Shown in pieces: positions 5,959 through 63,734 of a stretch of 64,000 nucleotides of DNA. The stretch is taken from the IMG/VR virus record IMGVR_UViG_3300027747_002221, positions 1 through 64,000 of that record; one strand, given 5' to 3'. The position numbers and the translations under genes are program-made. Position 1 is the stretch's first letter. The number at the start of each line of letters is the position of its first letter. The notes below the pieces were generated by a model that saw only the letters and a list, made by a program, of their open reading frames with translations, was not told the DNA's origin and ran no database searches.

Positions 5959-6458
5959 AATATATTAAAATCAAAAGATGCCACTCGGCGTTGTATACTA
6001 GATGGTGTTGCTTTATGCCAGAACTTTTTACCGTTATTTACTAGGAATAAATCTCCAGCAATTGGCTGAAAAGATTCTTCGCAATCCCCATATTTAAATT
6101 GGACTGCTCCGCCAGTTTCTAAATAAGTATTATCAAAATAATATAGAAAAAATAAATCGTACCCCTCAAACATATCAGTATGCCAACCTTGATTATCCTT
6201 ATCTACACCGTCCCACACGATAAATTTATTATATCTCGAATTATGCCAATTAGCATCTATATATTTTTCTTTTAAGTAATATGCAAATGTGTTTAATCTA
6301 TTAGTTAATTCCAAAGGAATATCTTTGATACCATTATCTCTAGATCTTTCTTCCACATTCAATAATTTAAAATCATTAATTTTTATTAATGATAGCGCAT
6401 CGGGTTCCAAAAATTTAAAAAATCCCTTTTCTTCTATATCTTTTACTATACTAGACAT
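5955..6458 (-). CDS. 2OG-Fe(II) oxygenase
   Basis: WDGVD...WHTD...GGAVQF...FWHKA...RRVASFDF. Confidence 0.72.
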   Translation of the reverse strand: MSSIVKDIEEKGFFKFLEPDALSLIKINDFKLLNVEERSRDNGIKDIPLELTNRLNTFAYYLKEKYIDANWHNSRYNKFIVWDGVDKDNQGWHTDMFEGYDLFFLYYFDNTYLETGGAVQFKYGDCEESFQPIAGDLFLVNNGKKFWHKATPSSIQRRVASFDFNIL

Positions 6459-10312: not shown

Positions 10313-11003
10313 TGGATTCCTCTTCTTTATTTTCTATTAATTGTAATCCTTCAGATATTCCAAAAGTTAACAAAAATAATGGGTTATTTTCGGTTGCCCA
10401 GTATGAGTATAAATTTTTTCCTCTAAACATATATTCACTGAAATATTTGGTATAAAACTTCAAATTTGATTCTTTAATCTTGCCATAGTAAATATAAAAA
10501 AGCTCATGCTTTAATAGAGATAAAAAATTTATGCCTGTTAGTTCTTCAGTTTCATCTACAGGAAATCCTTTTGCAAATTCTTGCATTTCCGGGGAATTCA
10601 CAATATACATATTAAATAGTGTTAAACTGTCTAGTTTACTTTCCCATTGTTTTATGATTTCCAAATTATCTTGTATAAAATTTTTATGGGGTATCAAATT
10701 TTCTATATCTATTTCTTTATATTCTAACAATAAATTTATTGTTAAAATTTCTAAACTTGGAATAGAACAAAGAACTGTAGAATTTAAATATTCCTTTAAA
10801 AGTTCTTCCTGTTCATTTTTATCATTAAAGCTAATATCGCATGGTATATCCAAATTAGAAATATACGTTAACAGTTTTGTGCCTTTAATTTTACTATTAG
10901 TATAATCTATTATAAATTCAACAGATTTATTTTCAAAATATTTTTTTAAATCTTCAATTGAAATAGGTGCAATAGTGTTAATTATAGTATTTGGTAAATT
11001 CAT
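10296..11003 (-). CDS. Hypothetical protein
   Basis: Likely start MNLPNTII at 11003 (TAATG coupling to stop of 11003..11638). Confidence 0.6.
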   Translation of the reverse strand: MNLPNTIINTIAPISIEDLKKYFENKSVEFIIDYTNSKIKGTKLLTYISNLDIPCDISFNDKNEQEELLKEYLNSTVLCSIPSLEILTINLLLEYKEIDIENLIPHKNFIQDNLEIIKQWESKLDSLTLFNMYIVNSPEMQEFAKGFPVDETEELTGINFLSLLKHELFYIYYGKIKESNLKFYTKYFSEYMFRGKNLYSYWATENNPLFLLTFGISEGLQLIENKEEESNVAPI

Positions 11004-11638
11004 TATCTTCTTCCTCTGGCAAAGTGGCATGCTGAATGGCATGATGCATGACAAACTGTGGCATCGTACACATAACTCTGATTTCTCGCATAATTTTGAT
11101 ACGCTGTTCTACATCTTTCCATAAAATTTTCCATTGAGTATGTAGATATTTGTAAATTTGTGTCTACTGCCCCGCGTGCAGGCGTTACATAATCACTCAA
11201 CCCCGTCTGCCCGGTAGAAAAGTTTAAATATGCTACAGCAATTACATCGTATACGAAACCCGCAGTAGGCTTAGTTCCGTTATTGCCACCAGTCCCATTA
11301 ACAAATAAACGAGCCTGGACACTTCTTATTTTGAGATACCGAGATGTAAAATAACTAAGATAAGTATGGATCCTCTCTGCAATAATTTGGTCACCGACAC
11401 CGGCAGGGTTGCCATCCATTTTCCCAATAAATGGGTCATTGGGTGGATAGTTAGGATTGTCATAATTATTGCCGCCCATATCACTAGTGGGTATAACTGC
11501 AGTCGCATATGCTGTTCCTGGGGCATATGTGGGCAAATTATTCGTACCCCAAGTCACACCCTGCCAATTGGTATACATATAGTCTTGGAATCTGCTTATT
11601 ATATTACGTTCGTTAACGGGATTGGTTAGTACCGCCAT
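11003..11638 (-). CDS. Gly/Asn/Thr-rich protein with C-terminal (CHxx)3 tail; candidate modification substrate
   Basis: Ends ...DATVCHASCHSACHFARGRR; lies immediately downstream of a rSAM/SPASM gene. Confidence 0.65.
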   Translation of the reverse strand: MAVLTNPVNERNIISRFQDYMYTNWQGVTWGTNNLPTYAPGTAYATAVIPTSDMGGNNYDNPNYPPNDPFIGKMDGNPAGVGDQIIAERIHTYLSYFTSRYLKIRSVQARLFVNGTGGNNGTKPTAGFVYDVIAVAYLNFSTGQTGLSDYVTPARGAVDTNLQISTYSMENFMERCRTAYQNYARNQSYVYDATVCHASCHSACHFARGRR

Positions 11639-12693
11639 GTTTCTTTCCTTATATTAATAATCTTATTTGATATAATATTTATACCTGCCAGAGATTTCAT
11701 TAAACTTTTTGGTGCACCACATACGTCATCTTGCCATGATAATTGGTGACAATCTCCACCACAATACTCAAAAACTTCGCAGGAATAACACCGGGTGTCC
11801 CCGCTTCTTTCACAGGCAATATTTTCTATGCGAGCAGGATTTGTTAAAAGCTGTTCTATACTATCAGTTATTTTTCCAAAATAGTTTTCTGGGGCGCTAT
11901 TTGGGCAACCTGCGATTGTCCCATCTGCATTAATTGTAAATAATTTTTCCTCACAATTTCTACAAAAAGTGCCAGATTTATTAAATCCGCTCTCAAACTT
12001 AATATATACATCTTCTAAAAAATCATTAGAAAACCATTTTCTTGCATCATACTGAACAGTTTGTTCATGCATTTTTAAAAACCATGCATCCTGTTCCAAA
12101 TTAGAAGGAAATATTTCCGGATGCAAATTTGCATTACCATTACCCGTCAATCTTTCAAATGATACTTCTTGTACTCCGAGTATTTTTATCCAGCTAAGTA
12201 AATGAATTGGGTCTATATTAATAGTATCTTTAGTTACACTAATAAAAAGCTTTACAGTTACGCTTTCATTGAGTAAAGTTTTTACATTTTTTAACCAAAG
12301 ATCAGATTGTTTAGTATTTGCAAATCTTATTTTTGGATCCCAACTTGTACCTACTCTATTTCCGAGTTGATTTTTTACAAAATTTATAATTTCAGAATCA
12401 AGTTTGTACGTCAAGTTTGTTGTTGCACACCAGGACATATTATTCCAAAGACCATTACAAGAATTATAAACCTTTTTCATTTCAGAAACAGGGACAAGAA
12501 AAGGTTCTCCGCCATGAAATTCAAAGTGTACGTTATCTAAATTTGGGGCGTAGGATTTTAGTCTGGTTATCCAATCTATAACTAAATCAGTATTCCAATA
12601 AACTTTGGCACCGTTAATACCATTAGTAAAACAATGTTTACAATTTAGGTTACAGGTTTCTGTTGTTTTTAAATAAACTAAAGCATTTTTCAT
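11626..12693 (-). CDS. Radical SAM/SPASM domain protein
   Basis: CNLNCKHC, FHGGEP; CRNC...IAGCP...CYSCEVFEYCGGDC...C SPASM pattern. Confidence 0.9.
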   Translation of the reverse strand: MKNALVYLKTTETCNLNCKHCFTNGINGAKVYWNTDLVIDWITRLKSYAPNLDNVHFEFHGGEPFLVPVSEMKKVYNSCNGLWNNMSWCATTNLTYKLDSEIINFVKNQLGNRVGTSWDPKIRFANTKQSDLWLKNVKTLLNESVTVKLFISVTKDTINIDPIHLLSWIKILGVQEVSFERLTGNGNANLHPEIFPSNLEQDAWFLKMHEQTVQYDARKWFSNDFLEDVYIKFESGFNKSGTFCRNCEEKLFTINADGTIAGCPNSAPENYFGKITDSIEQLLTNPARIENIACERSGDTRCYSCEVFEYCGGDCHQLSWQDDVCGAPKSLMKSLAGINIISNKIINIRKETWRY

Positions 12694-13177: not shown

Positions 13178-14848
13178 TTACATTAAGGCAATTTCAATTA
13201 TGCCTTCCTCATGTGTAGTTTTATCTTCCAATGCAATAAACCTAATCGGCAAATTATTAATATCTGTTCTTACCGCAATGCCGGGATTTGTAGATACGGT
13301 TAATAAATCGCCCTTACTACAAGTTCCGATTATTCTAATTGGAACGCGTCCTTTAAGTGCAACTGCTTGAGAATTTTCTAATTCCGAATTCATTAAGTAT
13401 GCAGGTTTATCAGAAATAACACCTATTATTCTATTGGGATAATGCATAGTTGCAATAGTTACTTCTTTTTCTCCACCTATCATAACTATGGTACCAACCG
13501 GATATTCTATATCGGTTAAATATTTTTCTGCCAAGTCAGCATAGTTTGCAGAAGTTGCTGTTCCTGAGAAGGTTGTGGCATATAAAGTATTAATTGCAGG
13601 ATTAAAGTAAAAATTTCCAAATCCGCTCACGCATGGAGTTTGTACACCAAATCCAGAAACAAAAACGGGATAGAAGTTTTGGTTGGCGCCAAGGCCAGTT
13701 ACAGAAATTGTGGTGCTAGATATCGATAATCCTGTTGCGCCAATCGGACCTGTTGCGCCAGTTAATCCCGTTGCGCCAGGTAGGCCCGGTGAACCAATTG
13801 ATCCTGTTGCGCCTGTTGAGCCTTTAGGACCCGTCGCTCCTGGGATAATGCTGGTTGCGCCAGTTGCGCCAATTCCTGTAGCACCTGTTGCGCCAATCGG
13901 ACCTGTTGCGCCAGTTAATCCCGTTGCGCCAGGTAGGCCAGTTGCACCCGTTGCACCCAATCCTGTTGCGCCCGTTGCACCCAATCCTGTTGCGCCTGTT
14001 GAGCCGTTCGCGCCGGTTGCACCGGTTGAACCTGTTGAGCCTTTCGCGCCGGTTGCCCCGGTGAATCCTGTAGCGCCAATCGGACCTGTTGCTCCTGTTC
14101 CGGTTGCGCCCGATGCACCCACTCCTGTTGCGCCAGTTAGACCCGTTGCGCCGGTTAAACCCGTTGCACCAGTTGGTCCTGTGCTCCCTGTTGAGCCAGT
14201 TGATCCCGTTGGTCCGGTTGTGCCGGTCGCACCCACAATGGCATTTCCCTGAGCACCAGTTGCACCCACGGGCCCTGTTGCGCCGGTTGGTCCTATAGAT
14301 CCTGTAGCACCGCGAAGACCTGTTGCGCCAGTGGGGCCTGTAACAATTACATTAGAACCCATAGGCCCAACTGGCCCAGTAGCACCAATAGGACCAGCTG
14401 GACCTTGCCCACCACCTAAAACGGGTAATATTGAAACAATATCGCCGGCTACTGTTGCAGTTGAAAGTATAACAGAATTAGATGTTACCGTATAGTCCGC
14501 TGCTTCTAAAGGACCACCTGGCGAAATTAAAACACCATTGACCCAGACTAAAACAGGATCAGTATTTGAATTAAATGTTAAATAAGTGCCCGCTAAACTA
14601 TTTGTTGTGTTATCAAATGTTGTTGTTGCATTTGCTGTTACATAATCATATCTAACTAAGGTTGAAGTATTTGCATCCAGCGGTGACCAATATCTTGTAC
14701 CATTTGGATCGCCCCGTAAATAATATCCAAGCGCACCCGGTAAACCTAAATTTGGTTCTGCCTGAGATAGCTGTAAGAAATTATATCTATCTAAAGATAT
14801 ATTGCCAGTTGCTGTGCGTACTTTGCCGCTTAAATTTTGTAGTGCCAT
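13178..14848 (-). CDS. Collagen-like tail fibre protein with C-terminal chaperone-like domain
   Basis: Long G-X-Y run ([10 protein letters not shown]); C-terminal [10 protein letters not shown]...GVIS..PAYLMN...ALKGRVP domain typical of large-phage fibres. Confidence 0.75.
13725..14410 (-). repeat. Collagen-like Gly-X-Y coding repeat (GATG[P/L/A/S]T)
   Basis: Degenerate 9/18-nt repeats (cctgttgcgcc, ccagttgcacc); locally GC-rich. Confidence 0.9.
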
Positions 14849-26698: not shown

Positions 26699-26724
26699 AA
26701 AAAAAGGGCGACCGAAGTCGCCCT
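26699..26724 (-). terminator. Intrinsic terminator with UUCG loop
   Basis: AGGGCGAC-TTCG-GTCGCCCT followed by T7 on minus strand. Confidence 0.85.
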
Positions 26725-26745: not shown

Positions 26746-27309
26746 CTAAATTTTTTGTGCCCAGGCCTTAATAACCGGATGCAAAATATCGTCAGTGTAG
26801 TCCATTTTCATAGTATTCACAATTGCTAGAACAATTTGAATATTGCCTTTAACATACCCCTTACTTGAACTGATGCGATCTACGCTAGGGCGGAATGGAT
26901 TACGTTTCTTTTTGGTACCTAATTCCATACTGAAATCAATACCTGTTAGTGTACACTTGCTTTTACATTCATCAAATACCTTTTGAATATATTCAGGAGT
27001 AAGATTAAATCCCATTACTCGCCCATCTTTAGCTTTTGCTTTAACTCGATTCTTTAAGGCAGTAAATTCAAGCTTACCAAAGTTTTCAGGTAATGCTTTT
27101 TTTGCTCTTGCAACTTCTCGTACTTTTTTACGAATAGCTTCTTTTTGTGCAGGAGTAATTTTCTCTTTATTCTTTTGGTAGTTCCATTTACCAAATGCTG
27201 TTGCCATCTCAGCTTCTTTGTCGGTTAATGGACGTGCATCTAATGCTCTGATTTGATGAAAACGCTTTGCTTCTTTACGGATTGCTGGATCTTCAAAATT
27301 ATATGTCAT
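26746..27309 (-). CDS. Free-standing HNH-like (His-Me finger) endonuclease
   Basis: CTLTGIDF...PSVDRISSSKGYVKGNIQIV..IVNTMK. Confidence 0.6.
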   Translation of the reverse strand: MTYNFEDPAIRKEAKRFHQIRALDARPLTDKEAEMATAFGKWNYQKNKEKITPAQKEAIRKKVREVARAKKALPENFGKLEFTALKNRVKAKAKDGRVMGFNLTPEYIQKVFDECKSKCTLTGIDFSMELGTKKKRNPFRPSVDRISSSKGYVKGNIQIVLAIVNTMKMDYTDDILHPVIKAWAQKI

Positions 27310-27413: not shown

Positions 27414-27665
27414 TTAAGCGCGGCTAAATGCGTCTCCGCCCATCATTGCGTAGGCGGCAGCTACCATTTTGCGGTTAGGTGTACCGAGACGGTAAGCAGT
27501 TTTACCGTTCTTAGTTTGGTTAGTGTAAACAGCATAACCGTCTGCACGGAGTTCGCTGATACGGGGACGGATGCTGTCTTCAGACGATCCGGTTAAACCT
27601 GCCAATTGAGCAGGCGTAAAATTACGACCAGACTCAAGTACTTTCAAAACACGTTGTTTCAACAT
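27414..27665 (-). CDS. Winged helix-turn-helix protein
   Basis: FTPAQLAGL...SIRPRISELRADGYAVY; follows a perfect sigma70 promoter. Confidence 0.65.
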   Translation of the reverse strand: MLKQRVLKVLESGRNFTPAQLAGLTGSSEDSIRPRISELRADGYAVYTNQTKNGKTAYRLGTPNRKMVAAAYAMMGGDAFSRA

Positions 27666-27724: not shown

Positions 27725-27753
27725 ATTATAATATAAAATTACAATCTTGTCAA
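27725..27753 (-). promoter_or_regulatory. Sigma70 early promoter
   Basis: TTGACA-17-TATAAT. Confidence 0.75.
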
Positions 27754-27761
27754 GGACTTAG

Positions 27762-28004
27762 TTATCCATTTCTATGATGTCTGCTCTGGCGGTTGCCTTT
27801 TGCATAGGTCTTCAAATACTCAATACCTACTGTACCGTCTTCAATTTCTTCCAACGCTCGCAGAATATTGCTTCTTGCATCACTATGCTTTTCCTTTTTT
27901 AGTTCTCGTGCTCTTGCAGTAGCAACCAAAACCATATCATACCGATTGCCTATTTTACGTACGGCATCTTCTGATGTATACCTACCCCGATCTAGATCTT
28001 TCAT
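27762..28004 (-). CDS. rpoZ: RNA polymerase omega subunit homolog
   Basis: TSEDAVRKIGNRYDMVLVATARAREL...ALEEIEDG vs E. coli [26 protein letters not shown]...ALREIEEG. Confidence 0.85.
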   Translation of the reverse strand: MKDLDRGRYTSEDAVRKIGNRYDMVLVATARARELKKEKHSDARSNILRALEEIEDGTVGIEYLKTYAKGNRQSRHHRNG

Positions 28005-28017
28005 AACTACCTTTATA

Positions 28018-28094
<77 letters not shown>

Positions 28095-28265
28095 AATTTA
28101 TTTAATTGTTTTCGTTACTATTAGTTTGTTGTTCGTTATATTGTTGAAGACGCATTTCAAATTGTTCTTCAGTCAAATTATGCCAACCTATACAAACTCC
28201 TGTTGGGCTACGACCACACCCGCATTGGGTATTTACTTCTGTCAAAGTATCTCTTGGATTAACTA

Positions 28266-28511
28266 TCATTCCATCTCCTTCTTTTTAATTTTCATTCCAA
28301 CAAATGTTCCAAAAAATGCACCTAGAATAGCAGGAATCATTAACCAATGATTCGTTGTATAATTTATAATAGCTATACTACCTAGCACATAGCAAGCCAC
28401 TGCCCATATACTAGCTTTTAATACTTGATTATGCTGTACATATCTTAAGTAATATGTATAAACTATATCGAGTAAAAAAATAGCTATAAATGTTGTTACA
28501 TAATCTATCAT
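28266..28511 (-). CDS. Small membrane protein
   Basis: Real start MIDYVTT at 28511 (the longer ORF overlaps tRNA-Leu); three hydrophobic segments. Confidence 0.6.
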   Translation of the reverse strand: MIDYVTTFIAIFLLDIVYTYYLRYVQHNQVLKASIWAVACYVLGSIAIINYTTNHWLMIPAILGAFFGTFVGMKIKKKEME

Positions 28512-28516
28512 ATTTT

Positions 28517-28602
28517 TGGTACCAGAGACGGGACTCGAACCCGTATGCCCTTGCGAGCGGCAGATTTTAAGTCTGCTGTGTATACCATTCCACCACTCTG
28601 GC
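28517..28602 (-). tRNA. tRNA-Leu(TAA)
   Basis: GCAGA-CTTAAAA-TCTGC, long variable arm, CCA. Confidence 0.92.
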
Positions 28603-28642
28603 ATTTGCTTATTATAAACTCTTTAGCTAAAAAGAACAATCT

Positions 28643-28933
28643 TTAGTCATCCAAAACATGATCCGCAACAGGCGAAACCTTATCCAAATAATTCTCTTTA
28701 TATCTTTTCTTTGATTCTTCCATATCAATGGAAATGCCAACTGAATCTTTTACTACAGTATAAACGGAATGCATAATCTTTTGTACCATTCTTTTTGCCA
28801 TGTCATCTATTACTTTATACGGATCGTCACCTGTTGCAATTCTTTGGAGAGCAAATCCATATTCATATTTACGAACTCGATCTACCCATTCTTCGAAAGT
28901 TTCATCTGGTTTTATTCTGATTACGTTGGACAT
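28643..28933 (-). CDS. Stand-alone glutamyl-tRNA reductase (HemA) dimerization-domain-like protein
   Basis: RVRKYEYGFALQRIATGDDPYKVIDDMAKRMVQKIMH fits the HemA C-terminal pattern RxxExxxAxxxLAxGxDPxxVLxxLxxxLxxKLxH. Confidence 0.6.
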   Translation of the reverse strand: MSNVIRIKPDETFEEWVDRVRKYEYGFALQRIATGDDPYKVIDDMAKRMVQKIMHSVYTVVKDSVGISIDMEESKKRYKENYLDKVSPVADHVLDD

Positions 28934-28939
28934 TCATTT

Positions 28940-29302
28940 TTAATCTTTAATTTGGCTATCGCCTGGCATTACTCTATAGTTATCTTCCACAGAATCTGGC
29001 GTGGAGACTTCTATAACTGTACCTGCTTCAATACACTCTAATTGGTGTGGCATACAAGGAACATTGTGCCATACCGCACCTTCATGCAATTCTTTTTCGA
29101 GAACTTCTGCTGTCATAGTATCAATCCAACGAACAATAAACTTGCCACTTTGTATGTACCAGGTTTCTTCTTTGTCTTTATGGAAGTGCATACTAAACTT
29201 AGCGCCCGCGTTGAAGTTCATAAACTTTCCGCAATATTTGTCATTGGTAGCCCAGATTAATTCTGAACCCCAACCTTTTGTAACCAAACCTGTTAATCTC
29301 AT
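28940..29302 (-). CDS. Cupin domain protein
   Basis: KGWGSELIW...FSMHFHKDKEETW...PHQL...EVST. Confidence 0.75.
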   Translation of the reverse strand: MRLTGLVTKGWGSELIWATNDKYCGKFMNFNAGAKFSMHFHKDKEETWYIQSGKFIVRWIDTMTAEVLEKELHEGAVWHNVPCMPHQLECIEAGTVIEVSTPDSVEDNYRVMPGDSQIKD

Positions 29303-29317
29303 TAAACTTCCTAACTA

Positions 29318-29391
29318 TGGAGCGGGATAGGAGAATCGAACTCCTGACTTGAACTTGGAAGGATCTCGTTTTACCACTAAACTAACCCCGC
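29318..29391 (-). tRNA. tRNA-Gly(TCC)
   Basis: Cloverleaf, CTTCCAA loop, CCA. Confidence 0.9.
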
Positions 29392-29883
29392 TTATGCTGC
29401 TAGCGCCGCCATAGCCATGACCTCTTTTAATCGGTCCGCGGCATAACTTGCGGCAAACGCATTTGGTTTAACCATAGGTACTACGTTACACATACCTTTG
29501 ATATAACCAACTGCTTGTTGAATAACTATAGAACTATTATAACATTCTTTAGGATTAATGTCAAGATGAATTTGAACTTCCTTGTCACCTATAACATCTG
29601 CTTCTAAAAGTTTGTGATATAATTCTGCAACTTTGTAAACTTCTGTCATTAGACGCATAGATGGTTTCCCCGCTTTTGCATCAAAGTCTATTTCAGTTTG
29701 TATTTCTCCAAAAATCTTACAACCATGGCATCCATCGATATGGACTACAATCGCAAGGGTATAATCTGCATACCATTTTCCATTGCGTCTATAGCGTTCG
29801 GAGTCTGCTCCTAAATATATTTTAGTTTCAGGACTTTGTTCTGCAATAAATCTTGTTACTTCAGCTATATCAATTTTTTTCAT
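29392..29883 (-). CDS. RNase H-like YkuK/DUF458 family protein
   Basis: IYLGADS...E..K...IHLDIN...KPNAFAASYAAD. Confidence 0.7.
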   Translation of the reverse strand: MKKIDIAEVTRFIAEQSPETKIYLGADSERYRRNGKWYADYTLAIVVHIDGCHGCKIFGEIQTEIDFDAKAGKPSMRLMTEVYKVAELYHKLLEADVIGDKEVQIHLDINPKECYNSSIVIQQAVGYIKGMCNVVPMVKPNAFAASYAADRLKEVMAMAALAA

Positions 29884-29897
29884 AGTAGCACCTTTTG

Positions 29898-29971
29898 TGG
29901 AGCGGGTAGCGAGAATCGAACTCGCGAATAAACCTTGGCAAGGTTTCAGGTTACCATTACATCATACCCGC
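29898..29971 (-). tRNA. tRNA-Gly(GCC)
   Basis: AAACC-TTGCCAA-GGTTT, CCA. Confidence 0.92.
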
Positions 29972-29979
29972 ATATTTAA

Positions 29980-30008
29980 ATTATAACACCAAACAAACAT
30001 TTTGTCAA
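29980..30008 (-). promoter_or_regulatory. Sigma70 early promoter
   Basis: TTGACA-17-TATAAT. Confidence 0.75.
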
Positions 30009-30016
30009 GCATTATT

Positions 30017-30090
30017 TGGTACCCCGTCACGGAGTCGAACCGCGGCCCTCAGTTTTGGAGACTGATGTGCTACCGTAACACTTACGAGAT
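30017..30090 (-). tRNA. tRNA-Trp(CCA)
   Basis: TCAGT-CTCCAAA-ACTGA, CCA. Confidence 0.88.
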
Positions 30091-30327
30091 ATTATTTTTA
30101 TACATAGCCATTAAGGCATCTTCTGTGGTCAAAATATCGTAGAACTCATCTTTGTCAGTTCCCGTATTATCAATTACGGATTTTTTTGATATGGATTTAA
30201 ACGCTTCATCTTCATTCTGTTGATCTTCAATTTCTCTTAGATCTCTGCCAAAAATAGCGTCCCATCTATTTTTGTATTCCTCATTGGTAACACTAAATGG
30301 TCTTGGGATAGAACCTTTTCCTGTCAT
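30082..30327 (-). CDS. Small hypothetical phage protein
   Basis: MTGKGSIPRPFSV...WDAIFG; TATAAATA at 30360-30367 upstream. Confidence 0.55.
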   Translation of the reverse strand: MTGKGSIPRPFSVTNEEYKNRWDAIFGRDLREIEDQQNEDEAFKSISKKSVIDNTGTDKDEFYDILTTEDALMAMYKNNIS

Positions 30328-30373
30328 TGCAATCTCCTAATAAATAAATGATAATAACATATTTATATCTACC

Positions 30374-30949
30374 ATGGATCCATACCTCGAGTTAGAAGTT
30401 TCTATCGACGCAACCGACGAAGAAATAAAAATACAATATAGAGCTATGGCTATGATTCATCATCCCGACAAAGGTGGAGATGAAGAAAAATTTAAACGTA
30501 TAAAAGAAGCGTATGAGATTTTATCTGATCCTATACGTCGTAAGGCATATGAAATATCTGGCGATGCAGAAACTAATTTACAAATTAGGAATGCTGCACT
30601 TGATCATATTGCTCAAATGATGGGACAAATTGTTCCCCAATTTAATTCTGAAGCTGATGATTTGTTTGCTATAATGAGACACGAAGTAAATAATATACGC
30701 CAGGGTATGATTGAAAATACAAACGTATGTGTTGGATATATGGCAAATCTACAAAAGGTTATGGTCAGAGTAAATGCCAAACATGATAAACATAATATCA
30801 TAATGGATATACTGCAAAAACAAATAGATTTTAGAAATCGAGAACACGCGGAATTTGCGCAACGTATTAAGGTTTGTGATCTTGAAATTGAAATTCTCAA
30901 AGACTACGAATATGGTTTAATAGAACGTATTCAATTGCCTGAGAATTAA
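30374..30949 (+). CDS. J-domain (DnaJ-like) protein
   Basis: MDPYLELEV...HHPDKGGDEEKFKRIKEAYEILSD (HPD motif), then helical C-terminus. Confidence 0.85.
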   Translation: MDPYLELEVSIDATDEEIKIQYRAMAMIHHPDKGGDEEKFKRIKEAYEILSDPIRRKAYEISGDAETNLQIRNAALDHIAQMMGQIVPQFNSEADDLFAIMRHEVNNIRQGMIENTNVCVGYMANLQKVMVRVNAKHDKHNIIMDILQKQIDFRNREHAEFAQRIKVCDLEIEILKDYEYGLIERIQLPEN

Positions 30950-30950
30950 A

Positions 30951-31024
30951 TGGATGCGGGAGATGGATTCGCACCACCCTCGAGAGAGCTTATGAGACTC
31001 TTCGGGTCACTAGACCTTCCCGCG
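30951..31024 (-). tRNA. Atypical tRNA-Met(CAT), initiator-like (C1:A72)
   Basis: CGCGGGA/TCCCGCA acceptor, 4-bp D-stem with 4-nt loop, CTCATAA loop, T-loop TGCGAAT, CCA. Confidence 0.7.
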
Positions 31025-31029
31025 CAATC

Positions 31030-31105
31030 TGGTGGTAATGAGTGGACTCGAACCACTAACACTCTGCTTATGAAGCAGGAAGACTAACCATTGTCCTACA
31101 TTACC
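31030..31105 (-). tRNA. tRNA-Met(CAT), elongator
   Basis: Cloverleaf, CTGC-TTCATAA-GCAG, CCA. Confidence 0.85.
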
Positions 31106-31124
31106 TATTACATAAAAATATAAA

Positions 31125-31214
31125 TGGCGGAGCGTCAGGGAGTCGAACCCTGTGAACCATTTTACCTGTTCTACGGTTTAGCAAACCGCTGCCTTACCAC
31201 CCGGCCCACGCTCC
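31125..31214 (-). tRNA. tRNA-Ser(GCT)
   Basis: GCGGT-TTGCTAA-ACCGT, long variable arm, GCCA. Confidence 0.92.
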
Positions 31215-31218
31215 ATTT

Positions 31219-31310
31219 TGGCGGAAGACGGAGGAGTCGAACCCCATCCCTGTTAAGAGAACCTGGTTTTCAAGGCCAGTCGCAGGACCAACCCCGCTGC
31301 ATCATCTTCC
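31219..31310 (-). tRNA. tRNA-Ser(TGA)
   Basis: CTGGC-CTTGAAA-ACCAG, long variable arm, GCCA. Confidence 0.88.
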
Positions 31311-31424
31311 AAATTTGTGTTAGGTATTTTTGTGTCAGGAACCTAACAAACCCCGTGAGCACAGCCCATCCTGTTTTCGTGTCAGCGGAGGCGGAATATG
31401 GTTACAGGTCCGCCCTGTTATTTA
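31311..31424 (-). ncRNA. Candidate structured ncRNA between tRNA-Phe and tRNA-Ser
   Basis: GC-rich non-coding spacer with several helices (see findings). Confidence 0.4.
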
Positions 31425-31500
31425 TGGTACCAAGAGACGGGATCGAACCGCCCACACCCGGATTTTCAATCCGGTGCTCTACCAACTGAGCTATCTTGGC
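31425..31500 (-). tRNA. tRNA-Phe(GAA)
   Basis: CCGGA-TTGAAAA-TCCGG, CCA. Confidence 0.93.
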
Positions 31501-31502
31501 AT

Positions 31503-31577
31503 TGGGTCGAGGTACGAGGATCGAACTCGTGATAGCGGAATCACAACCCGCGGTTTTACCACTAAACTAACCTCAAC
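31503..31577 (-). tRNA. tRNA-His(GTG)
   Basis: Encoded G-1:C73, GCGGG-TTGTGAT-TCCGC. Confidence 0.92.
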
Positions 31578-31583
31578 ATAGAT

Positions 31584-31660
31584 TGGCCGGCCCTGAGAGA
31601 CTCGAACTCCCAACCTCTAGTTTCGAAGACTAGCACTCTAATCCATTGAGTTAAGGGCCG
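31584..31660 (-). tRNA. tRNA-Arg(TCG)
   Basis: CTAGT-CTTCGAA-ACTAG, GCCA. Confidence 0.92.
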
Positions 31661-31664
31661 TTAT

Positions 31665-31756
31665 TGGTACCAGCGGTGAGACTCGAACTCACTCAAGAAC
31701 GCTAATCTGGCGCTAAAAGGTGTATAAGACCTCTCTGACTACCCAGTCTCGCTGGC
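31665..31756 (-). tRNA. Atypical tRNA with TAT anticodon and long variable arm
   Basis: GCCAGCG/CGCTGGT acceptor, GACT-GGGT-AGTC mini D-arm, GAGGT-CTTATAC-ACCTT, variable hairpin AGCGC/GCGTT, GTGAG-TTCGAGT-CTCAC, ACCA. Confidence 0.75.
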
Positions 31757-31847
31757 AATTAATACTGACTACCATATAGAAACACACTTGATATAGTAGC
31801 ATTTGCTATCACGGATGAACCCGAGTTTAATCAAATATGTTTTTATA
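31757..31847 (-). ncRNA. Candidate three-way-junction ncRNA
   Basis: 13-bp closing stem AAACATATTTGAT/ATCAAGTGTGTTT enclosing two hairpins. Confidence 0.45.
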
Positions 31848-31923
31848 TGGTACGGGCAGAGGGATTCGAACCCACGACCAATAGATTAAAAGTCTACTGC
31901 TCTACCGACTGAGCTATACCCGC
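31848..31923 (-). tRNA. tRNA-Lys(TTT)
   Basis: GTAGA-CTTTTAA-TCTAT, CCA. Confidence 0.93.
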
Positions 31924-32034
31924 GTTTATTGCTCTTCGTAATGCTTTGTTAGGCTTACGATGGCTACCCGCTTTTCTTTTTAAAGCCAAAACAACGAAGG
32001 GGTTACGTTGCCTGACGATTATCTTATGCTTCAT
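31894..32034 (-). CDS. Small very basic ORF (46 aa) running into tRNA-Lys
   Basis: AGGAG RBS; MKHKIIVRQRNPFVVLALKRKAGSHRKPNKALRRAINAGIAQSVEQ; not in ORF track. Confidence 0.55.
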   Translation of the reverse strand: MKHKIIVRQRNPFVVLALKRKAGSHRKPNKALRRAINAGIAQSVEQ

Positions 32035-32053
32035 TTTTATCTCCTAAAACACT

Positions 32054-32082
32054 ATTATAACATCTTTTTTAAAACTTGTCAA
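32054..32082 (-). promoter_or_regulatory. Sigma70 early promoter
   Basis: TTGACA-17-TATAAT. Confidence 0.75.
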
Positions 32083-32085
32083 ATT

Positions 32086-32159
32086 TGGCAGAGGGTACTG
32101 GGATCGAACCAGTGATGACAGAGTCAAAGTCTGTAGTGTTGCCTCTACACTAACCCCCA
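32086..32159 (-). tRNA. tRNA-Gln(TTG)
   Basis: ACAGA-CTTTGAC-TCTGT, GCCA. Confidence 0.9.
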
Positions 32160-32160
32160 A

Positions 32161-32250
32161 CAAAAAAATTATGGCAGGTGAGGTATCCACTACTCAGGGT
32201 CTAGCCCCCTTTCGTTGCCCATTCTCCTTTTACTTTCCTTACCATAAACT
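32161..32250 (-). ncRNA. Candidate structured ncRNA between tRNA-Arg and tRNA-Gln
   Basis: Closing stem TATGGTA/TGCCATA followed by a T-run. Confidence 0.3.
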
Positions 32251-32325
32251 TGGTCCGCCGAAGAGGAATCGAACCTCTATTAATAGCTTAGAAGGCTACT
32301 GTTCTATCCGTTGAACTATCGGCAG
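32251..32325 (-). tRNA. tRNA-Arg(TCT)
   Basis: GTAGC-CTTCTAA-GCTAT, CCA. Confidence 0.92.
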
Positions 32326-32330
32326 GTATT

Positions 32331-32594
32331 TTATTCTGCGACTGCCAATACATTATCCTCAGAAACTACACCGAGATACATATCGCCTTCTTTTACTGTC
32401 TTGATATTTTGCCATTGCAAATATACAATATCTCCAACTTTGACTTCTTCAACATCTGGTCCAATTGCAAGTACAGTTCCTGTCTTTGCTCTAGGATCAG
32501 CTAAAGTCTTGCCTACATAGATACCGCTTTCAGTTTCTTCTTGACGTTCCGTATCTTTAACTAGTATATTGTTTCTAAGTGGTTGATATTTCAT
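32331..32594 (-). CDS. groES: Co-chaperonin GroES (Cpn10)
   Basis: YQPLRNNILVK...TESGIYV...GTVLAIGP...VKVGDIV...EDNVLAV. Confidence 0.88.
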   Translation of the reverse strand: MKYQPLRNNILVKDTERQEETESGIYVGKTLADPRAKTGTVLAIGPDVEEVKVGDIVYLQWQNIKTVKEGDMYLGVVSEDNVLAVAE

Positions 32595-32614
32595 AGTTTT
32601 CTTTCAAGTTAATA

Positions 32615-32688
32615 TGGTGCCCCATGACAGAATCGAACTGCCGTAACCTGATTACAAAACAGGTGTAATACCATTATACTAATAGGGC
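32615..32688 (-). tRNA. tRNA-Thr(TGT)
   Basis: Cloverleaf, TTTGTAA loop, CCA. Confidence 0.9.
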
Positions 32689-32690
32689 AT

Positions 32691-32765
32691 TGGTACCTGG
32701 TGACAGTTTCGAACTGCCGACCCTCTCGGTGTAAACGAGACGCTCTACCACTGAGCTAACCAGGC
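32691..32765 (-). tRNA. tRNA-Val(TAC)
   Basis: TCTCG-TTTACAC-CGAGA, CCA. Confidence 0.93.
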
Positions 32766-32769
32766 AATT

Positions 32770-32854
32770 TGGTGGAGGTAGTTAGATTCGAACCAACTCA
32801 CCCGAAAGAACAGATTTACAGTCTGCCGCGCCTCTCCAACTGCGCCGTACCTCC
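32770..32854 (-). tRNA. tRNA-Tyr(GTA)
   Basis: GCAGA-CTGTAAA-TCTGT, long variable arm, CCA. Confidence 0.93.
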
Positions 32855-32858
32855 AATT

Positions 32859-32933
32859 TGGCTCCCCTGCGTGGGCTCGAACCACGGACCAAATGATTAA
32901 CAGTCATCTACTCTACCACTGAGCTACAAGGGA
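32859..32933 (-). tRNA. tRNA-Asn(GTT)
   Basis: ATGA-CTGTTAA-TCAT, GCCA. Confidence 0.92.
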
Positions 32934-32940
32934 ATATACA

Positions 32941-33017
32941 TGGTCCGTGTGACACGATTCGAACATGCGACCACCTGGTCCCAAACCAGGAGCTCTACCA
33001 GGCTGAGCTACACACGG
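32941..33017 (-). tRNA. tRNA-Pro(TGG)
   Basis: CCTGG-TTTGGGA-CCAGG, CCA. Confidence 0.93.
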
Positions 33018-33024
33018 ATAAATT

Positions 33025-33099
33025 TGGTGGAGGATAGGAGATTCGAACTCCTGACTGAAGCTTGCAAAGCTACTGCGTTCCCAATTACGCCAATCCCCC
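33025..33099 (-). tRNA. tRNA-Ala(TGC)
   Basis: G3:U70 pair, TTTGCAA loop, CCA. Confidence 0.9.
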
Positions 33100-33110
33100 G
33101 AATATTTTTT

Positions 33111-33187
33111 TGGTGCCCCAGGCGAGACTCGAACTCGCAAAATTTGGCTTCTAAGACCAACACGTATACCAATTCCGTCACCGAGGC
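33111..33187 (-). tRNA. tRNA-Leu(TAG) with short variable loop
   Basis: TTGGT-CTTAGAA-GCCAA, 5-nt variable region, ACCA. Confidence 0.85.
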
Positions 33188-33193
33188 AAATAC

Positions 33194-33269
33194 TGGCGGT
33201 CTTAGGGGGTAACGATCCCCACTCTTACGGCGTGACAAGCCGTCGTGCGTCCATGAACACTTTAAGACC
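33194..33269 (-). tRNA. tRNA-Asp(GTC)
   Basis: ACGGC-TTGTCAC-GCCGT, GCCA. Confidence 0.9.
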
Positions 33270-33270
33270 A

Positions 33271-33470
33271 TATTAGGATAAGCTACTGGTTTTCCGGGCC
33301 AGCCCTTAATTGAGCAGTTACTCTGTCCATCCCATTTATTCTGTCGTCTGTGTGCAGTTGGGATTCTGCCTATCAGAGCCTGAGTATTTCTCTCGCTAAC
33401 GGTTTTCTGCCACCGGATCTCTATCGCTAATCAAGCGCTATTTTAACGAAAATAGTAACGGGATCTTTTT
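33271..33470 (-). ncRNA. Candidate ~200-nt multi-hairpin ncRNA
   Basis: No ORF; at least 5 hairpins; directly downstream of a sigma70 promoter. Confidence 0.5.
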
Positions 33471-33480
33471 ACTTGTTTCT

Positions 33481-33508
33481 ATTATAACATCATTACAATA
33501 ATTGTCAA
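33481..33508 (-). promoter_or_regulatory. Sigma70 early promoter
   Basis: TTGACA-16-TATAAT. Confidence 0.7.
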
Positions 33509-33518
33509 GCATTAATTT

Positions 33519-33596
33519 TGGAACCTAGGGTCAGATTTGAACTGACGATTTTACGGATTTGCAATCCGGTGCATTTGACCGCTCTGCCACCTAGGC
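33519..33596 (-). tRNA. tRNA-Cys(GCA)
   Basis: CCGGA-TTGCAAA-TCCGT, TCCA. Confidence 0.9.
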
Positions 33597-33631
33597 ATAA
33601 ACCATTATTTTGTAGCCTGTACACAAAATAA

Positions 33632-33707
33632 TGGCGTCCCGTACCGGATTCGAACCGGTGTGAATAGCGTGAAAGGCTACTATCCTAGGCCTCTAGATGA
33701 ACGGGAC
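33632..33707 (-). tRNA. tRNA-Glu(TTC)
   Basis: GTAGC-CTTTCAC-GCTAT, GCCA. Confidence 0.92.
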
Positions 33708-33710
33708 ATT

Positions 33711-33784
33711 TGGTCCTCTCGGATGGTAACGATCCAACGTCTATCGATTATCAATCGATTGCTCTACCTTTGAGCTACAAGAGG
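33711..33784 (-). tRNA. tRNA-Ile(GAT)
   Basis: ATCGA-TTGATAA-TCGAT, CCA. Confidence 0.9.
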
Positions 33785-33846: not shown

Positions 33847-33875
33847 ATTATAACACCTTTTAGTAACCTTGTCAA
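33847..33875 (-). promoter_or_regulatory. Sigma70 early promoter heading the tRNA array
   Basis: TTGACA-17-TATAAT. Confidence 0.75.
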
Positions 33876-50672: not shown

Positions 50673-50674
50673 AA

Positions 50675-52971: not shown

Positions 52972-52973
52972 AG

Positions 52974-62403: not shown

Positions 62404-62410
62404 ATTTTTC

Positions 62411-63733: not shown

Positions 63734-63734
63734 A

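What the first reader, a model, noticed from the sequence alone, without database searches (positions are those of the whole stretch)
27762..28004. Phage-encoded RNA polymerase omega subunit
Seen: strong motif identity to RpoZ, but the segment between the conserved helices is shorter and the C-terminus is basic. Established: omega aids beta' assembly and forms part of ppGpp site 1 in proteobacterial RNAP. Inference: swapping in a phage omega could desensitise host RNAP to the stringent response. That would suit transcription of the adjacent tRNA array from its consensus sigma70 promoters.
Basis: partly seen in the sequence, partly recalled or inferred. Interest (0 to 1): 0.65.

Follow-up and report, generated by a model that had tools for sequence, protein, structure and literature searches.

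The report
Phage-encoded RNA polymerase omega subunit
A large T4-like freshwater phage carries its own divergent copy of the smallest subunit (omega) of bacterial RNA polymerase, fused to the end of its tRNA gene array; this is one member of a widespread, apparently undescribed viral omega family that probably slots into the host enzyme.

Summary
Window 27762-28004 (- strand) is an 80-aa ORF that passes the curated cut-offs of Pfam RNA_pol_Rpb6 and NCBIfam rpoZ. Its model matches only omega chains in the PDB. It is predicted to dock on E. coli beta' at the omega site (ipSAE 0.78, best control 0.00).

The genome is a complete 222-kb T4-like phage from lake metagenomes. It has no beta/beta' genes and 24 perfect sigma70 consensus promoters, so the protein must act on host RNA polymerase.

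The gene is not a one-off. At least 134 IMG/VR contigs carry relatives, which split from proteobacterial omegas on a well-supported branch. All have basic C-terminal tails. Most lie inside or at the 3' edge of a same-strand tRNA array. dN/dS is about 0.07.

In this clade the proteobacterial N-terminal MAR motif, which marks ppGpp site 1, is buried behind a conserved 6-residue extension. Arg and Thr are kept.

The "ppGpp desensitising" idea is therefore plausible but unproven. It is weakened by AT-rich promoter discriminators, by MAR being retained in some viral relatives, and by the dominance of the DksA site.

No isolated phage in INPHARED and no paper in the searched library describes this. 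I rate it a new variant of a known kind, of moderate to high interest.

The parts
27762..28004 (-). Phage rpoZ-like gene, 80 aa: N-terminal extension (res 1-6), GRYTSEDA segment (7-14), helices 12-18, 21-38, 43-56, 62-75, basic SRHHR tail (74-78)
28005..28017 (-). 13-nt junction between the CCA end of the upstream tRNA and the omega ATG; holds the AAAGG ribosome-binding site. The arrangement is conserved in relatives
28018..28094 (-). tRNA with CAT anticodon directly upstream of omega. The same pairing (7-17 nt spacing in most) is seen in most relatives
28018..33784 (-). Array of 25 tRNA genes with interspersed small ORFs; the only tRNAs of the 222-kb genome
29536..29564 (-). Nearest upstream perfect sigma70 consensus promoter (12/12, TG extended -10); likely start of the unit that ends with omega
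29980..30008 (-). Perfect sigma70 consensus promoter in the tRNA array
32054..32082 (-). Perfect sigma70 consensus promoter in the tRNA array
33481..33508 (-). Perfect sigma70 consensus promoter in the tRNA array
33847..33875 (-). Perfect sigma70 consensus promoter at the head of the tRNA array
27725..27753 (-). Perfect sigma70 consensus promoter immediately after the omega stop, in front of the wHTH gene
27414..27665 (-). 83-aa winged-helix protein, always the next gene after omega in the window's clade and its sister clades
26746..27309 (-). 187-aa endonuclease VII/HNH-like protein (weaker likeness to T4 Srd), syntenic with omega
26705..26724 (-). First strong intrinsic-terminator-like site downstream of omega (8-bp stem, 6 GC, T run)

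Best explanation
The ORF encodes a functional, virus-adapted paralogue of the bacterial RNA polymerase omega subunit.

Expression (inferred): it is made early in infection from host-sigma70-type promoters, as the last cistron of the tRNA-array transcription unit. Its ribosome-binding site starts 3-4 nt after the tRNA's CCA end.

Binding (inferred): the protein occupies the omega slot on the host beta' subunit, supplementing or replacing host omega. The phage thereby supplies its own 'latch' for the host core enzyme.

Most likely benefit: an omega-saturated, stable and processive RNAP on the long, largely untranslated tRNA array and the unidirectional phage operons. The altered parts give phage-specific regulation on top of that. 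These parts are the blocked N-terminus at ppGpp site 1, the family-specific G-x-E-Y-L motif at E. coli position 60-64, and the basic SRHHR tail.

Shown here: homology, fold, phage context, purifying selection, conserved tRNA linkage.
Inferred: binding to host beta', timing of expression, and every functional consequence.
For: - Family membership is above curated cut-offs.
- AF2 model: pLDDT 80, four helices. The first 50 of 82 Foldseek PDB matches are all omega chains, TM 0.55-0.6 to E. coli and Vibrio.
- Predicted complex with E. coli beta' 340-940 + 1131-1407: ipSAE 0.78, best of 3 controls 0.00, at least 77% contact agreement, partner pLDDT at least 67. That mark was reached by 51/78 solved and 2/108 mismatched pairs. 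Contacts fall on beta' 362-364, 417-418, 474-488, 613-619, 905-913 and 1360-1364.
- 12 of 19 invariant family residues are predicted contact residues (Fisher p 0.003).
- The phage is T4-like (gp43 49% identical to cyanophage) and has no Rpb1/Rpb2 domain.
- 24 perfect sigma70 promoters against 0.6 expected.
- dN/dS is 0.07 for unsaturated pairs.
- 134 IMG/VR contigs carry relatives. 63 of 89 omega-bearing loci have a tRNA within 500 nt, mostly 7-17 nt upstream.
- One metatranscriptome contig with 0 mismatches spans the tRNA/omega junction (X23 record 29).
- Omega-less E. coli RNAP is less processive and more prone to Rho termination (preprint PMC13192885).
Against: - No experiment exists. Docking was tested only on E. 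coli beta' fragments. The pass may reflect memory of solved omega complexes, and this job differs from the calibration.
- The host is unknown, so whether host omega is limiting or displaceable is unknown. In E. coli omega changes little with growth conditions (PMC7676912).
- The RNA-library contig could be carried-over DNA.
- The tRNA linkage may be inherited synteny within a broad phage lineage rather than repeated selection. Shared small genes in the tRNA region point to common descent.
- The processivity benefit is extrapolated from one E. coli preprint.
Confidence: 0.6

Rival explanations
1. ppGpp-blind omega. The phage omega takes the omega slot. Its N-terminal extension (M-K-D-L-D-R before G-R-Y-T) removes or plugs ppGpp site 1, so RNAP carrying it ignores the alarmone at that site. 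Phage and tRNA transcription then continue in starved or stringent hosts.
For: - MAR at the extreme N-terminus predicts site 1, and omega residues 2-5 hold the ppGpp phosphates (PMC6912228, PMC7676912).
- Here that segment is internal (residues 7-10) and is predicted to lie on beta' 362-364, 417-418 and 613-619.
- The extension motif M-[KR]-D-[LI]-D-R recurs in a second, distant viral cluster (L081).
- Only a few of 55 unique viral omegas start with an exact MAR.
- The stringent response can restrict phages, and phages counter it (PMC13483052).
- A MazG-like gene is present elsewhere in the genome.
Against: - R8 and T10 (E. coli R3, T5) are conserved.
- Some viral omegas keep MAR.
- Promoters are perfect consensus with AT-rich discriminators, many with TG extended -10. 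By established knowledge of stringent promoters, this class is not the one inhibited.
- Loss of site 1 has a mild phenotype in E. coli and the DksA site has stronger effects (PMC7676912).
- No DksA/TraR-like or RelA/SpoT-like gene is in the phage.
- It is unknown whether the host has site 1.
Confidence: 0.25
2. Docking platform. The phage omega is mainly an adaptor. Its free, conserved basic tail (G-N-R-x-S-R-H-H-R) or its G-x-E-Y-L surface recruits a phage factor, most obviously the 83-aa winged-helix protein encoded next to it, or recruits nucleic acid, to host RNAP. This would resemble the way GafA activates RcGTA genes through omega.
For: - The wHTH gene lies 4-116 nt downstream of omega in nearly all loci of clusters 7, 6 and 8 and part of cluster 3, and is highly conserved (phmmer E 1e-37 to 1e-52 for 83 aa).
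- All 55 viral omegas have net positive tails (mean +3.8).
- An S-x-H-H-R/K motif recurs in separate clusters.
- Tail residues beyond residue 64 are not among the confident beta' contacts.
- Precedent: a GTA regulator acts through omega (PMC9638019, abstract).
Against:
- Many omega-bearing phages lack the wHTH next to omega.
- Adjacency alone is weak evidence.
- The wHTH gene has its own promoter.
Confidence: 0.15
3. Dominant-negative omega for host shut-off. The variant binds beta' and impairs or redirects host transcription, as the dominant-lethal E. coli rpoZ N60D allele does. The phage's consensus promoters or modified DNA escape the effect.
For: - The viral family's invariant G60/E62/Y63 replace E. 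coli N60/Q62/I63. This is the region where N60D is dominant-lethal and suppressed by beta' Y457 (preprint PMC13192885).
- The gene sits in an early 'takeover'-type region, beside an Srd-like/endonuclease gene.
Against: - Nothing in the sequence indicates toxicity.
- beta'-contact residues are conserved as in a normal omega.
- The phage itself depends on the same RNAP throughout infection.
Confidence: 0.07
4. Artefact or passenger: host rpoZ DNA mis-assembled into a viral contig, or a recently captured gene with no function.
For: Metagenome assemblies can be chimeric. One relative sits on a 7-kb contig binned into a Lentimicrobiaceae MAG.
Against: - The same gene in the same phage synteny is found on many independent contigs and samples.
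- Viral omegas are split from 9 proteobacterial omegas by a branch with 100/96 support.
- dN/dS is about 0.07.
- The MAG has its own separate omega.
- No bacterial gmk/spoT-type neighbours are present.
Confidence: 0.02

Closest known systems
Bacterial RNA polymerase omega subunit RpoZ (PF01192 / TIGR00690), nearest solved examples Vibrio cholerae and E. coli
   Same: Same family by curated profile scores and same helical fold. The beta'-contact residues are conserved (G-N-R-[FY], A-R-A-R, A-L-x-E-I). It is predicted to occupy the same site on beta'. A profile of the viral clade scores Vibrio 54.6 and E. coli 53 bits, against about 32 for Caulobacter, Xanthomonas and Pseudomonas and 27 for Bacillus.
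   Different: - It is encoded by a phage, downstream of a tRNA rather than in a cellular context.
- A 6-residue N-terminal extension hides the MAR-equivalent.
- The loop between helices 2 and 3 is 5 residues shorter than in E. coli.
- It carries the family-specific G-x-E-Y-L motif.
- The tail is basic and His-rich, where gamma-proteobacterial tails are acidic.
- Identity is only about 41% over the core.
Phage-encoded sigma factors and small host-RNAP-binding proteins of T4-like phages (e.g. gp55, gp33, AsiA, RpbA; from general knowledge)
   Same: The phage supplies a small protein that joins the host core RNAP to redirect or tune it. This phage also has a weak gp55-like Sigma70_r2 match.
   Different: Those proteins are sigma-like or have no cellular core-subunit homologue. 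This one is a paralogue of a core subunit itself.
Rpb6/RpoK-type subunits of virus-encoded multisubunit RNA polymerases (e.g. nucleocytoplasmic large DNA viruses), and the jumbo-phage split beta/beta' RNAPs (PMC7598289, PMC4666361 seen)
   Same: A virus carries a member of the omega/Rpb6 family, or parts of a multisubunit RNAP.
   Different: Those subunits serve the virus's own polymerase. Here no beta/beta' homologue is detectable, and the promoters are host sigma70 consensus.
GafA-omega control of the Rhodobacter gene transfer agent (PMC9638019)
   Same: Omega is used as the regulatory contact point for a phage-like element. A small DNA-binding protein gene is linked to omega here.
   Different: There the omega is the host's and the regulator is the element's. 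Here the element supplies the omega. No interaction has been tested.

Membership tests
Bacterial RNAP omega (RpoZ; PF01192, TIGR00690) | Profile score above the curated cut-off | tested here: met
   PF01192 43.1 bits against 26; TIGR00690 34.5 bits against 23.6
Bacterial RNAP omega (RpoZ; PF01192, TIGR00690) | Omega fold (three core helices plus a C-terminal helix) | tested here: met
   AF2 pLDDT 80, helices 12-18, 21-38, 43-56, 62-75. Foldseek: the first 50 of 82 PDB matches are all omega chains, prob 1.00 for the best ones and TM 0.55-0.6, although the best E is 2.6e-3, which is above the tool's 1e-3 line
Bacterial RNAP omega (RpoZ; PF01192, TIGR00690) | Docks on beta' at the omega site (in silico) | tested here: met
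   ipSAE 0.78 against best control 0.00; at least 77% contact agreement; partner pLDDT at least 67. The calibration was 51/78 solved and 2/108 mismatched pairs. The fragment design differs from the calibration, and the pass may come from memory of solved complexes
Bacterial RNAP omega (RpoZ; PF01192, TIGR00690) | Physically part of RNAP core in cells | not testable with these tools
   Needs pull-down or reconstitution
Bacterial RNAP omega (RpoZ; PF01192, TIGR00690) | Cellular gene in a bacterial chromosome context | tested here: not met
   It lies in a complete 222-kb virus record between a tRNA array and phage genes
ppGpp site-1-competent omega (proteobacterial MAR type) | Met-Ala-Arg at the extreme N-terminus (PMC6912228) | tested here: not met
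   The protein starts M-K-D-L-D-R. The aligned segment is G7-R8-Y9-T10
ppGpp site-1-competent omega (proteobacterial MAR type) | Arg and Thr equivalent to E. coli R3 and T5 present and placed at beta' R362/R417/K615 | tested here: met
   R8 is nearly invariant and T10 invariant. Residues 7-12 are predicted to touch beta' 362-364, 417-418 and 613-619
ppGpp site-1-competent omega (proteobacterial MAR type) | Binds ppGpp together with beta' | not testable with these tools
   Needs DRaCALA or crosslinking and transcription assays
T4-like, host-RNAP-dependent phage | gp43-type family B DNA polymerase, no own beta/beta', host-type early promoters | tested here: met
   PolB is 49% identical to cyanophage gp43. 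There is no Rpb1_1 or Rpb2_6 match. 24 perfect sigma70 promoters against 0.6 expected
T4-like, host-RNAP-dependent phage | gp55-type late sigma | tested here: inconclusive
   Sigma70_r2 match of 23 bits, just under the cut-off of 24, at genome 86946-87089
Accessory subunit of a phage-encoded multisubunit RNAP (phiKZ/AR9 type) | Phage genes for beta/beta'-like polypeptides | tested here: not met
   No Pfam Rpb1_1 or Rpb2_6 match at E <= 1 in the complete genome. Very divergent homologues could escape these two profiles

The most novel reading that the evidence does not exclude
Large aquatic phages carry a dedicated, anciently viral omega lineage that converts host RNA polymerase into a phage-specific form. 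The conserved N-terminal extension would occupy or disable the ppGpp site-1 pocket. The basic S-R-H-H-R tail would recruit the adjacent winged-helix protein or nucleic acid. Together these would free stable-RNA (tRNA-array) and phage transcription from the host's starvation control and termination. That would be the first case of a phage reprogramming host RNAP by swapping a core subunit.
Probability: 0.2. Interest if true: 0.85.

Novelty: new variant of a known kind. Interest (0 to 1): 0.62.

Why it matters
Phages are known to add sigma factors, inhibitors and covalent modifications to host RNA polymerase. A phage-supplied paralogue of a core subunit would be a further, apparently undescribed, takeover route.

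The family is common in uncultured large freshwater phages: at least 134 IMG/VR contigs, with genomes up to 354 kb. It is tied to their tRNA arrays, so it bears on why big phages carry tRNA sets and how those sets are expressed in slow-growing, nutrient-limited hosts.

The role of bacterial omega is still debated (assembly latch, sigma competition, ppGpp site 1, processivity). A natural set of variants with altered N-termini, an altered position-60 motif and basic tails gives ready-made probes for those questions.

Tried and rejected
- Near-identity DNA search of the region in 50,697 GenBank phage records gave no match.
- tblastn of three different viral omegas against the same records returned only bacterial rpoZ in contaminated or mis-labelled records: Salmonella/E. 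coli sequence in 'Campylobacter phage' and short 'phage' records, 240-kb 'Acinetobacter phage MD-2021a' contigs, and one 4.4-kb unannotated human faecal 'Bacteriophage sp.' record (MT839270.1, 41% identity, E 2e-4) that I did not examine. I therefore found no isolated phage with this gene.
- The pattern scan of 185,579 species genomes found a single relative, on a short MAG contig. That MAG has its own omega elsewhere, so I treat the contig as a binned phage fragment, not as a host clue.
- 'Relatives' cannot be drawn for a virus record, and no proteobacterial genome handle was available. The host could therefore not be identified, and the donor lineage could only be narrowed to 'proteobacterial type, nearest solved Vibrio/E. 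coli'. A resemblance I recall to beta-proteobacterial omegas (same loop length, G-x-x-G-x-E-x-L-K end) could not be tested.
- I looked for other stringent-response genes in the phage. There is no DksA/TraR zinc finger and no RelA/SpoT domain. Only a MazG-like match was found.
- The original site-1 structure papers (PMC3654024, PMC3677725, PMC3695517) are not held. The residue list therefore rests on PMC7676912 and PMC6912228.
- Literature searches for phage-encoded omega or rpoZ in jumbo, huge or T4-like phages, and in the freshwater phage survey whose UniProt entries resemble this protein, found no discussion of it.
- Metatranscriptome contigs cover omega only partly, in one of four runs laid, and cannot prove transcription.
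- I considered and rejected a phiKZ-like own polymerase and assembly chimerism.

Full report

Window 27762-28004 on the minus strand is an 80-codon ORF. It has an ATG start and an AAAGGT ribosome-binding site 6 nt upstream.
- It scores 43.1 bits on Pfam RNA_pol_Rpb6 (cut-off 26) and 34.5 bits on NCBIfam TIGR00690 rpoZ (cut-off 23.6).
- Against all PDB sequences, the 20 matches at E <= 0.01 are all omega subunits. E. coli is best (35 bits), with phage residues 8-73 aligned to E. coli 3-73.
- The alignment has two gaps, five residues in all, in the loop between helices 2 and 3.
- The last 15 residues carry K, R, R, H, H, R and no acidic residue. The 'basic C-terminus' is also correct.
- ARAGORN finds 25 tRNA genes at 28018-33784, all on the same strand. 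They are the only tRNAs in the genome.
- Five perfect TTGACA-N16/17-TATAAT promoters lie in or just upstream of the array, and one lies just after the omega stop codon.

**2. What genome is this?**

The window is the first 64 kb of a 222,055-bp IMG/VR virus record rated 100% complete.
- Its family B DNA polymerase is 48-49% identical to gp43 of T4-like cyanophages over its full length.
- No Rpb1 or Rpb2 domain is detectable. There is a weak gp55-like Sigma70_r2 match.
- The genome holds 24 perfect sigma70 consensus promoters, all on the coding strand, against 0.6 expected from a first-order Markov model.

This is a T4-superfamily phage that uses host RNA polymerase with a canonical primary sigma. 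The DNA is found in many freshwater-lake metagenomes. The host is not known.

**3. Is it a one-off?**

No.
- The word-indexed search found 35 clusters at 48-99% identity over the aligned part, all metagenomic and 56-88 aa long. JGI had auto-named some of them omega.
- A pattern scan of IMG/VR found 134 contigs encoding relatives. The 80 kept are 43-100% identical, and several lie on genomes of 200-354 kb.
- Five such large genomes all have gp43-like polymerases, one 71% and four about 30% identical to the window's. The gene therefore sits in at least two deep lineages.
- The exhaustive search was used because the claim of a virus-specific clade rests on the absence of close cellular relatives. 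It gave 102 hits at E <= 1e-3. Apart from two truncated or chimeric fragments, none was above 57% identity outside the window's own cluster, which did not appear as a hit. True gamma-proteobacterial omegas scored only 36-42 bits.
- Three further representatives that I looked up all sit in phage-like contexts. One has the same synteny as the window.
- In a maximum-likelihood tree, nine alpha-, beta- and gamma-proteobacterial omegas are separated from all 55 viral ones by a single branch with 100/96 support. The caveats are few columns, an unrooted tree and few bacterial rows.
- BFVD holds three UniProt entries from 'uncultured Caudovirales phage' with the same fold, auto-annotated as RNA polymerase or omega.
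- No isolated phage in INPHARED has the gene. The hits are bacterial rpoZ in contaminated or mislabelled records, plus one unannotated 4.4-kb faecal 'Bacteriophage sp.' record that I did not examine.
- I found no paper that discusses it.

**4. Anatomy and conservation**

Within the window's clade the invariant residues are T10, S11, A14, G19, N20, Y22, L26, R31-E34, K36, A50, L51, E55, G57, G60, E62 and Y63. Three things set the protein apart from cellular omegas.

(a) The N-terminus.
- E. coli starts M-A-R-V-T. The phage has M-K-D-L-D-R and then G-R-Y-T.
- The extension is 6 residues in the closest relatives and 12-13 in sister groups.
- A near-identical M-R-D-I-D-R start occurs in a distant cluster.
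- Across the 55 unique viral proteins, only a few begin with an exact MAR. Others begin M-T-A-R, M-S-R or M-P-R, or lack the Arg.

(b) The motif after helix 3.
- It reads G-x-x-G-x-E-Y-L-K, where E. coli has G-L-I-N-N-Q-I-L-D.
- Phage G60 aligns with E. coli N60.

(c) The tail.
- All 55 viral proteins have a net positive tail (mean +3.8), against -6 and -7 in two gamma-proteobacterial omegas.
- An S-[RH]-H-H-[RK] motif recurs in separate clusters.

The gene is under strong purifying selection. dN/dS is 0.07 for the two unsaturated pairs and 0.1-0.25 for deeper pairs.

**5. Fold and docking**

The AF2 model, built on an 88-sequence alignment, has pLDDT 80. It shows helices at 12-18, 21-38, 43-56 and 62-75, and a poorly ordered N-terminus. 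The first 50 of 82 Foldseek PDB matches are all omega chains. Probability is 1.00 for the best and TM is 0.55-0.6 to E. coli and Vibrio. The best E-value is 2.6e-3, weaker than the tool's 1e-3 line.

A complex prediction with E. coli beta' residues 340-940 and 1131-1407 gave these results:
- ipSAE was 0.78 in all three runs, against 0.00 for the best of three controls.
- Contact agreement was at least 77% and partner pLDDT was at least 67.
- In the tool's calibration this mark was reached by 51 of 78 solved complexes and 2 of 108 mismatched pairs.
- The tool warns that the counts hold only roughly for this fragment design, and that a pass for a family with solved complexes shows likeness, not binding.

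The confident contacts are the known omega site. Phage residues 19-33 and 45-51 lie on beta' 474-488 and 905-913, with further contact to beta' 1360-1364. Phage residues 7-12 lie on beta' 362-364, 417-418 and 613-619. The last set contains R362, R417, K615 and I619, the beta' side of ppGpp site 1 (PMC7676912). Twelve of the 19 invariant residues are predicted contact residues (Fisher p = 0.003). Residues 1-6 and 65-80 are not confidently placed.

**6. Expression context**

The omega ATG lies 13 nt after the CCA end of a CAT-anticodon tRNA. No strong promoter or terminator lies between the perfect promoter at 29564-29536 and omega. The first strong terminator-like site is at 26724-26705, after the next two genes. 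The most economical reading is an early-type transcript that carries tRNAs, small ORFs and omega.

The 'tRNA-CCA, a few bases, AAAGG, ATG' junction is conserved in relatives.
- Across all fetched loci, 63 of 89 have a tRNA within 500 nt of omega, and most have one 7-17 nt upstream.
- In six of eight sequence clusters, omega lies inside or at the 3' edge of a same-strand array. In the other two clusters, tRNAs are 2-8 kb away.
- In the window's genome the array is 2.6% of the DNA.
- Part of this linkage is inherited synteny, because the same small genes (a 55-aa Cys-rich ORF, a cupin, an RNase-H-like protein) recur in these tRNA regions. The cases are therefore not independent.
- The linkage has nonetheless survived divergence down to 43% identity in omega and about 30% in the polymerase.

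Contigs from four lake metatranscriptomes were laid on 3.4 kb. One 158-nt contig with no mismatch (27916-28073) spans the tRNA/omega junction, and another covers a relative's omega. DNA carry-over cannot be excluded.

**7. How it most likely works**

Shown: it is an omega-family protein, virus-encoded, conserved and selected, in a phage that depends on host RNAP.

Inferred: it binds host beta' in the omega slot and is made early, together with the tRNAs.

The most conservative functional reading follows the established 'latch' role of omega. A 2026 preprint reports that omega-less E. coli RNAP is less processive and more sensitive to Rho and to some intrinsic terminators (PMC13192885). On that basis the phage would guarantee an omega-saturated, stable polymerase for a 5.8-kb, largely untranslated tRNA array and for long unidirectional operons. 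The phage-specific parts (blocked N-terminus, G60-E-Y-L motif, basic tail) would then add regulation of the phage's own. I put 0.6 on this package, and about 0.9 on 'is an omega that acts on host RNAP'.

**8. The ppGpp idea**

Arguments for it:
- The MAR rule is broken.
- The N-terminal segment sits at site 1 in the predicted complex.
- The extension is conserved and carries two Asp residues facing a basic pocket.
- Viral N-termini are generally unconstrained.
- The stringent response is now known to restrict some phages (PMC13483052).

Arguments against it:
- R8 and T10 are kept, and some viral omegas keep MAR.
- The phage promoters are perfect consensus with AT-rich discriminators, many with TG extended -10. 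By established knowledge this is not the class shut down by ppGpp/DksA.
- In E. coli, loss of site 1 has only mild effects, while loss of DksA (site 2) is more severe (PMC7676912).
- I do not know the host.

I rate this idea 0.25. It is compatible with the main explanation rather than exclusive of it.

**9. Other rivals**
- Adaptor role for the tail, perhaps with the winged-helix protein that follows omega in most close and sister clades: 0.15.
- Dominant-negative shut-off factor, suggested by the change at the N60 position: 0.07.
- Artefact or passenger: 0.02.

**10. Comparison with known systems and novelty**

By every sequence and fold criterion tested, it is a member of the omega/Rpb6 family. 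It is not a cellular rpoZ, and it fails the MAR criterion for site-1-competent omegas.

It works like other phage-supplied RNAP parts, such as sigma factors and small binders, but it is a core-subunit paralogue. It differs from Rpb6-type subunits of giant eukaryotic viruses and from jumbo-phage polymerases because there is no viral catalytic subunit for it to serve.

Databases already auto-label such genes as omega. The existence of the annotation is therefore not new. The viral clade, its special termini and its tRNA linkage appear undescribed in the literature I could search. My rating is a new variant of a known kind, interest 0.62.

**11. Conduct**
- Only table 11 was used.
- Read laying was given 3,401 letters, under the operators' 6,000 limit.
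- The costly exhaustive protein search was used once, for the reason stated in section 3.

Noticed in passing
whole genome G000; in the window at 58653, 52665, 43004, 35426, 33875, 33508, 32082, 30008, 29564, 27753 (- strand): There are 24 perfect TTGACA-N16-18-TATAAT promoters, all on the coding strand (0.6 expected). Many have a G-T-G-T extended -10 and a t-g-c just upstream of the -35, and all have AT-rich discriminators. This is a very uniform early-promoter class.
   Followed up: partly
window 27414-27665 (-): This 83-aa winged-helix protein has sub-threshold HTH_11/HTH_39 matches and PHROG hits to Ren-like and MarR families. It is the next gene after omega in nearly all close and sister clades and seems more conserved than omega itself. 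It is a possible partner of omega; this was not tested.
   Followed up: partly
window 26746-27309 (-): This 187-aa protein matches phage endonuclease / endonuclease VII / HNH families (E 1.7e-26). It also matches, more weakly, T4 Srd 'anti-sigma / sigma70 decoy' families (5e-8, 2.5e-5). It is syntenic with omega.
   Followed up: no
window 28018-28094 (-): ARAGORN calls the tRNA in front of omega Met(CAT). It has a G1:C72 pair and lacks the three G:C pairs of initiator anticodon stems. From memory it closely resembles the lysidine-modified tRNA-Ile2 that reads AUA, which would suit an AT-rich phage. This was not tested.
   Followed up: no
window 31665-31756 (-): ARAGORN reports a 92-nt 'tRNA-Ile(tat)', which is unusually long for an Ile tRNA. 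It may be a mis-call, a class II-like tRNA or an interrupted gene.
   Followed up: no
window 28643-28933 (-): This 96-aa ORF inside the tRNA array passes the Pfam cut-off for the glutamyl-tRNA reductase dimerisation domain (29.4 bits against 22.9). It is conserved in the tRNA regions of relatives. Its function is unknown.
   Followed up: no
window 28102-28269 (-): A 55-aa Cys-rich ORF lies between two tRNAs. Homologues recur in the tRNA regions of distantly related omega-bearing phages (E 1e-11 to 1e-37).
   Followed up: no
window 29392-29883 (-) and 29536-29564: This RNase-H-like (PF04308) gene is conserved in the tRNA region of many relatives. A perfect sigma70 promoter lies inside its coding sequence.
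   Followed up: no
window 1-12000 and 50000-64000: There are low-GC (26-31%) blocks of sugar / nucleotide-sugar type genes. They include a B12-binding radical SAM protein (6446-8161), a HAD-nucleotidyltransferase fusion (50675-52048) and a DegT/DnrJ aminotransferase (62411-63748). They may serve DNA or surface-glycan modification.
   Followed up: no
window 13178-14848 (-): This 556-aa protein has collagen triple-helix repeats and a sub-threshold match to the Peptidase_G2 / intramolecular-chaperone autocleavage domain. It is probably a tail fibre.
   Followed up: no
G000 86519-86674 and 86946-87089 (-), outside the window: A MazG-like pyrophosphohydrolase match (24 bits, cut-off 22) lies beside the gp55-like Sigma70_r2 match. 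MazG has been linked to alarmone or nucleotide-pool control in cyanophages.
   Followed up: no
L011 / L092 (MAG contig CAZEDO010000145.1) and L093: A viral-type omega sits on a 7-kb contig binned into a Lentimicrobiaceae MAG that also has its own, different omega on another contig. This is probably a phage fragment in the bin.
   Followed up: partly
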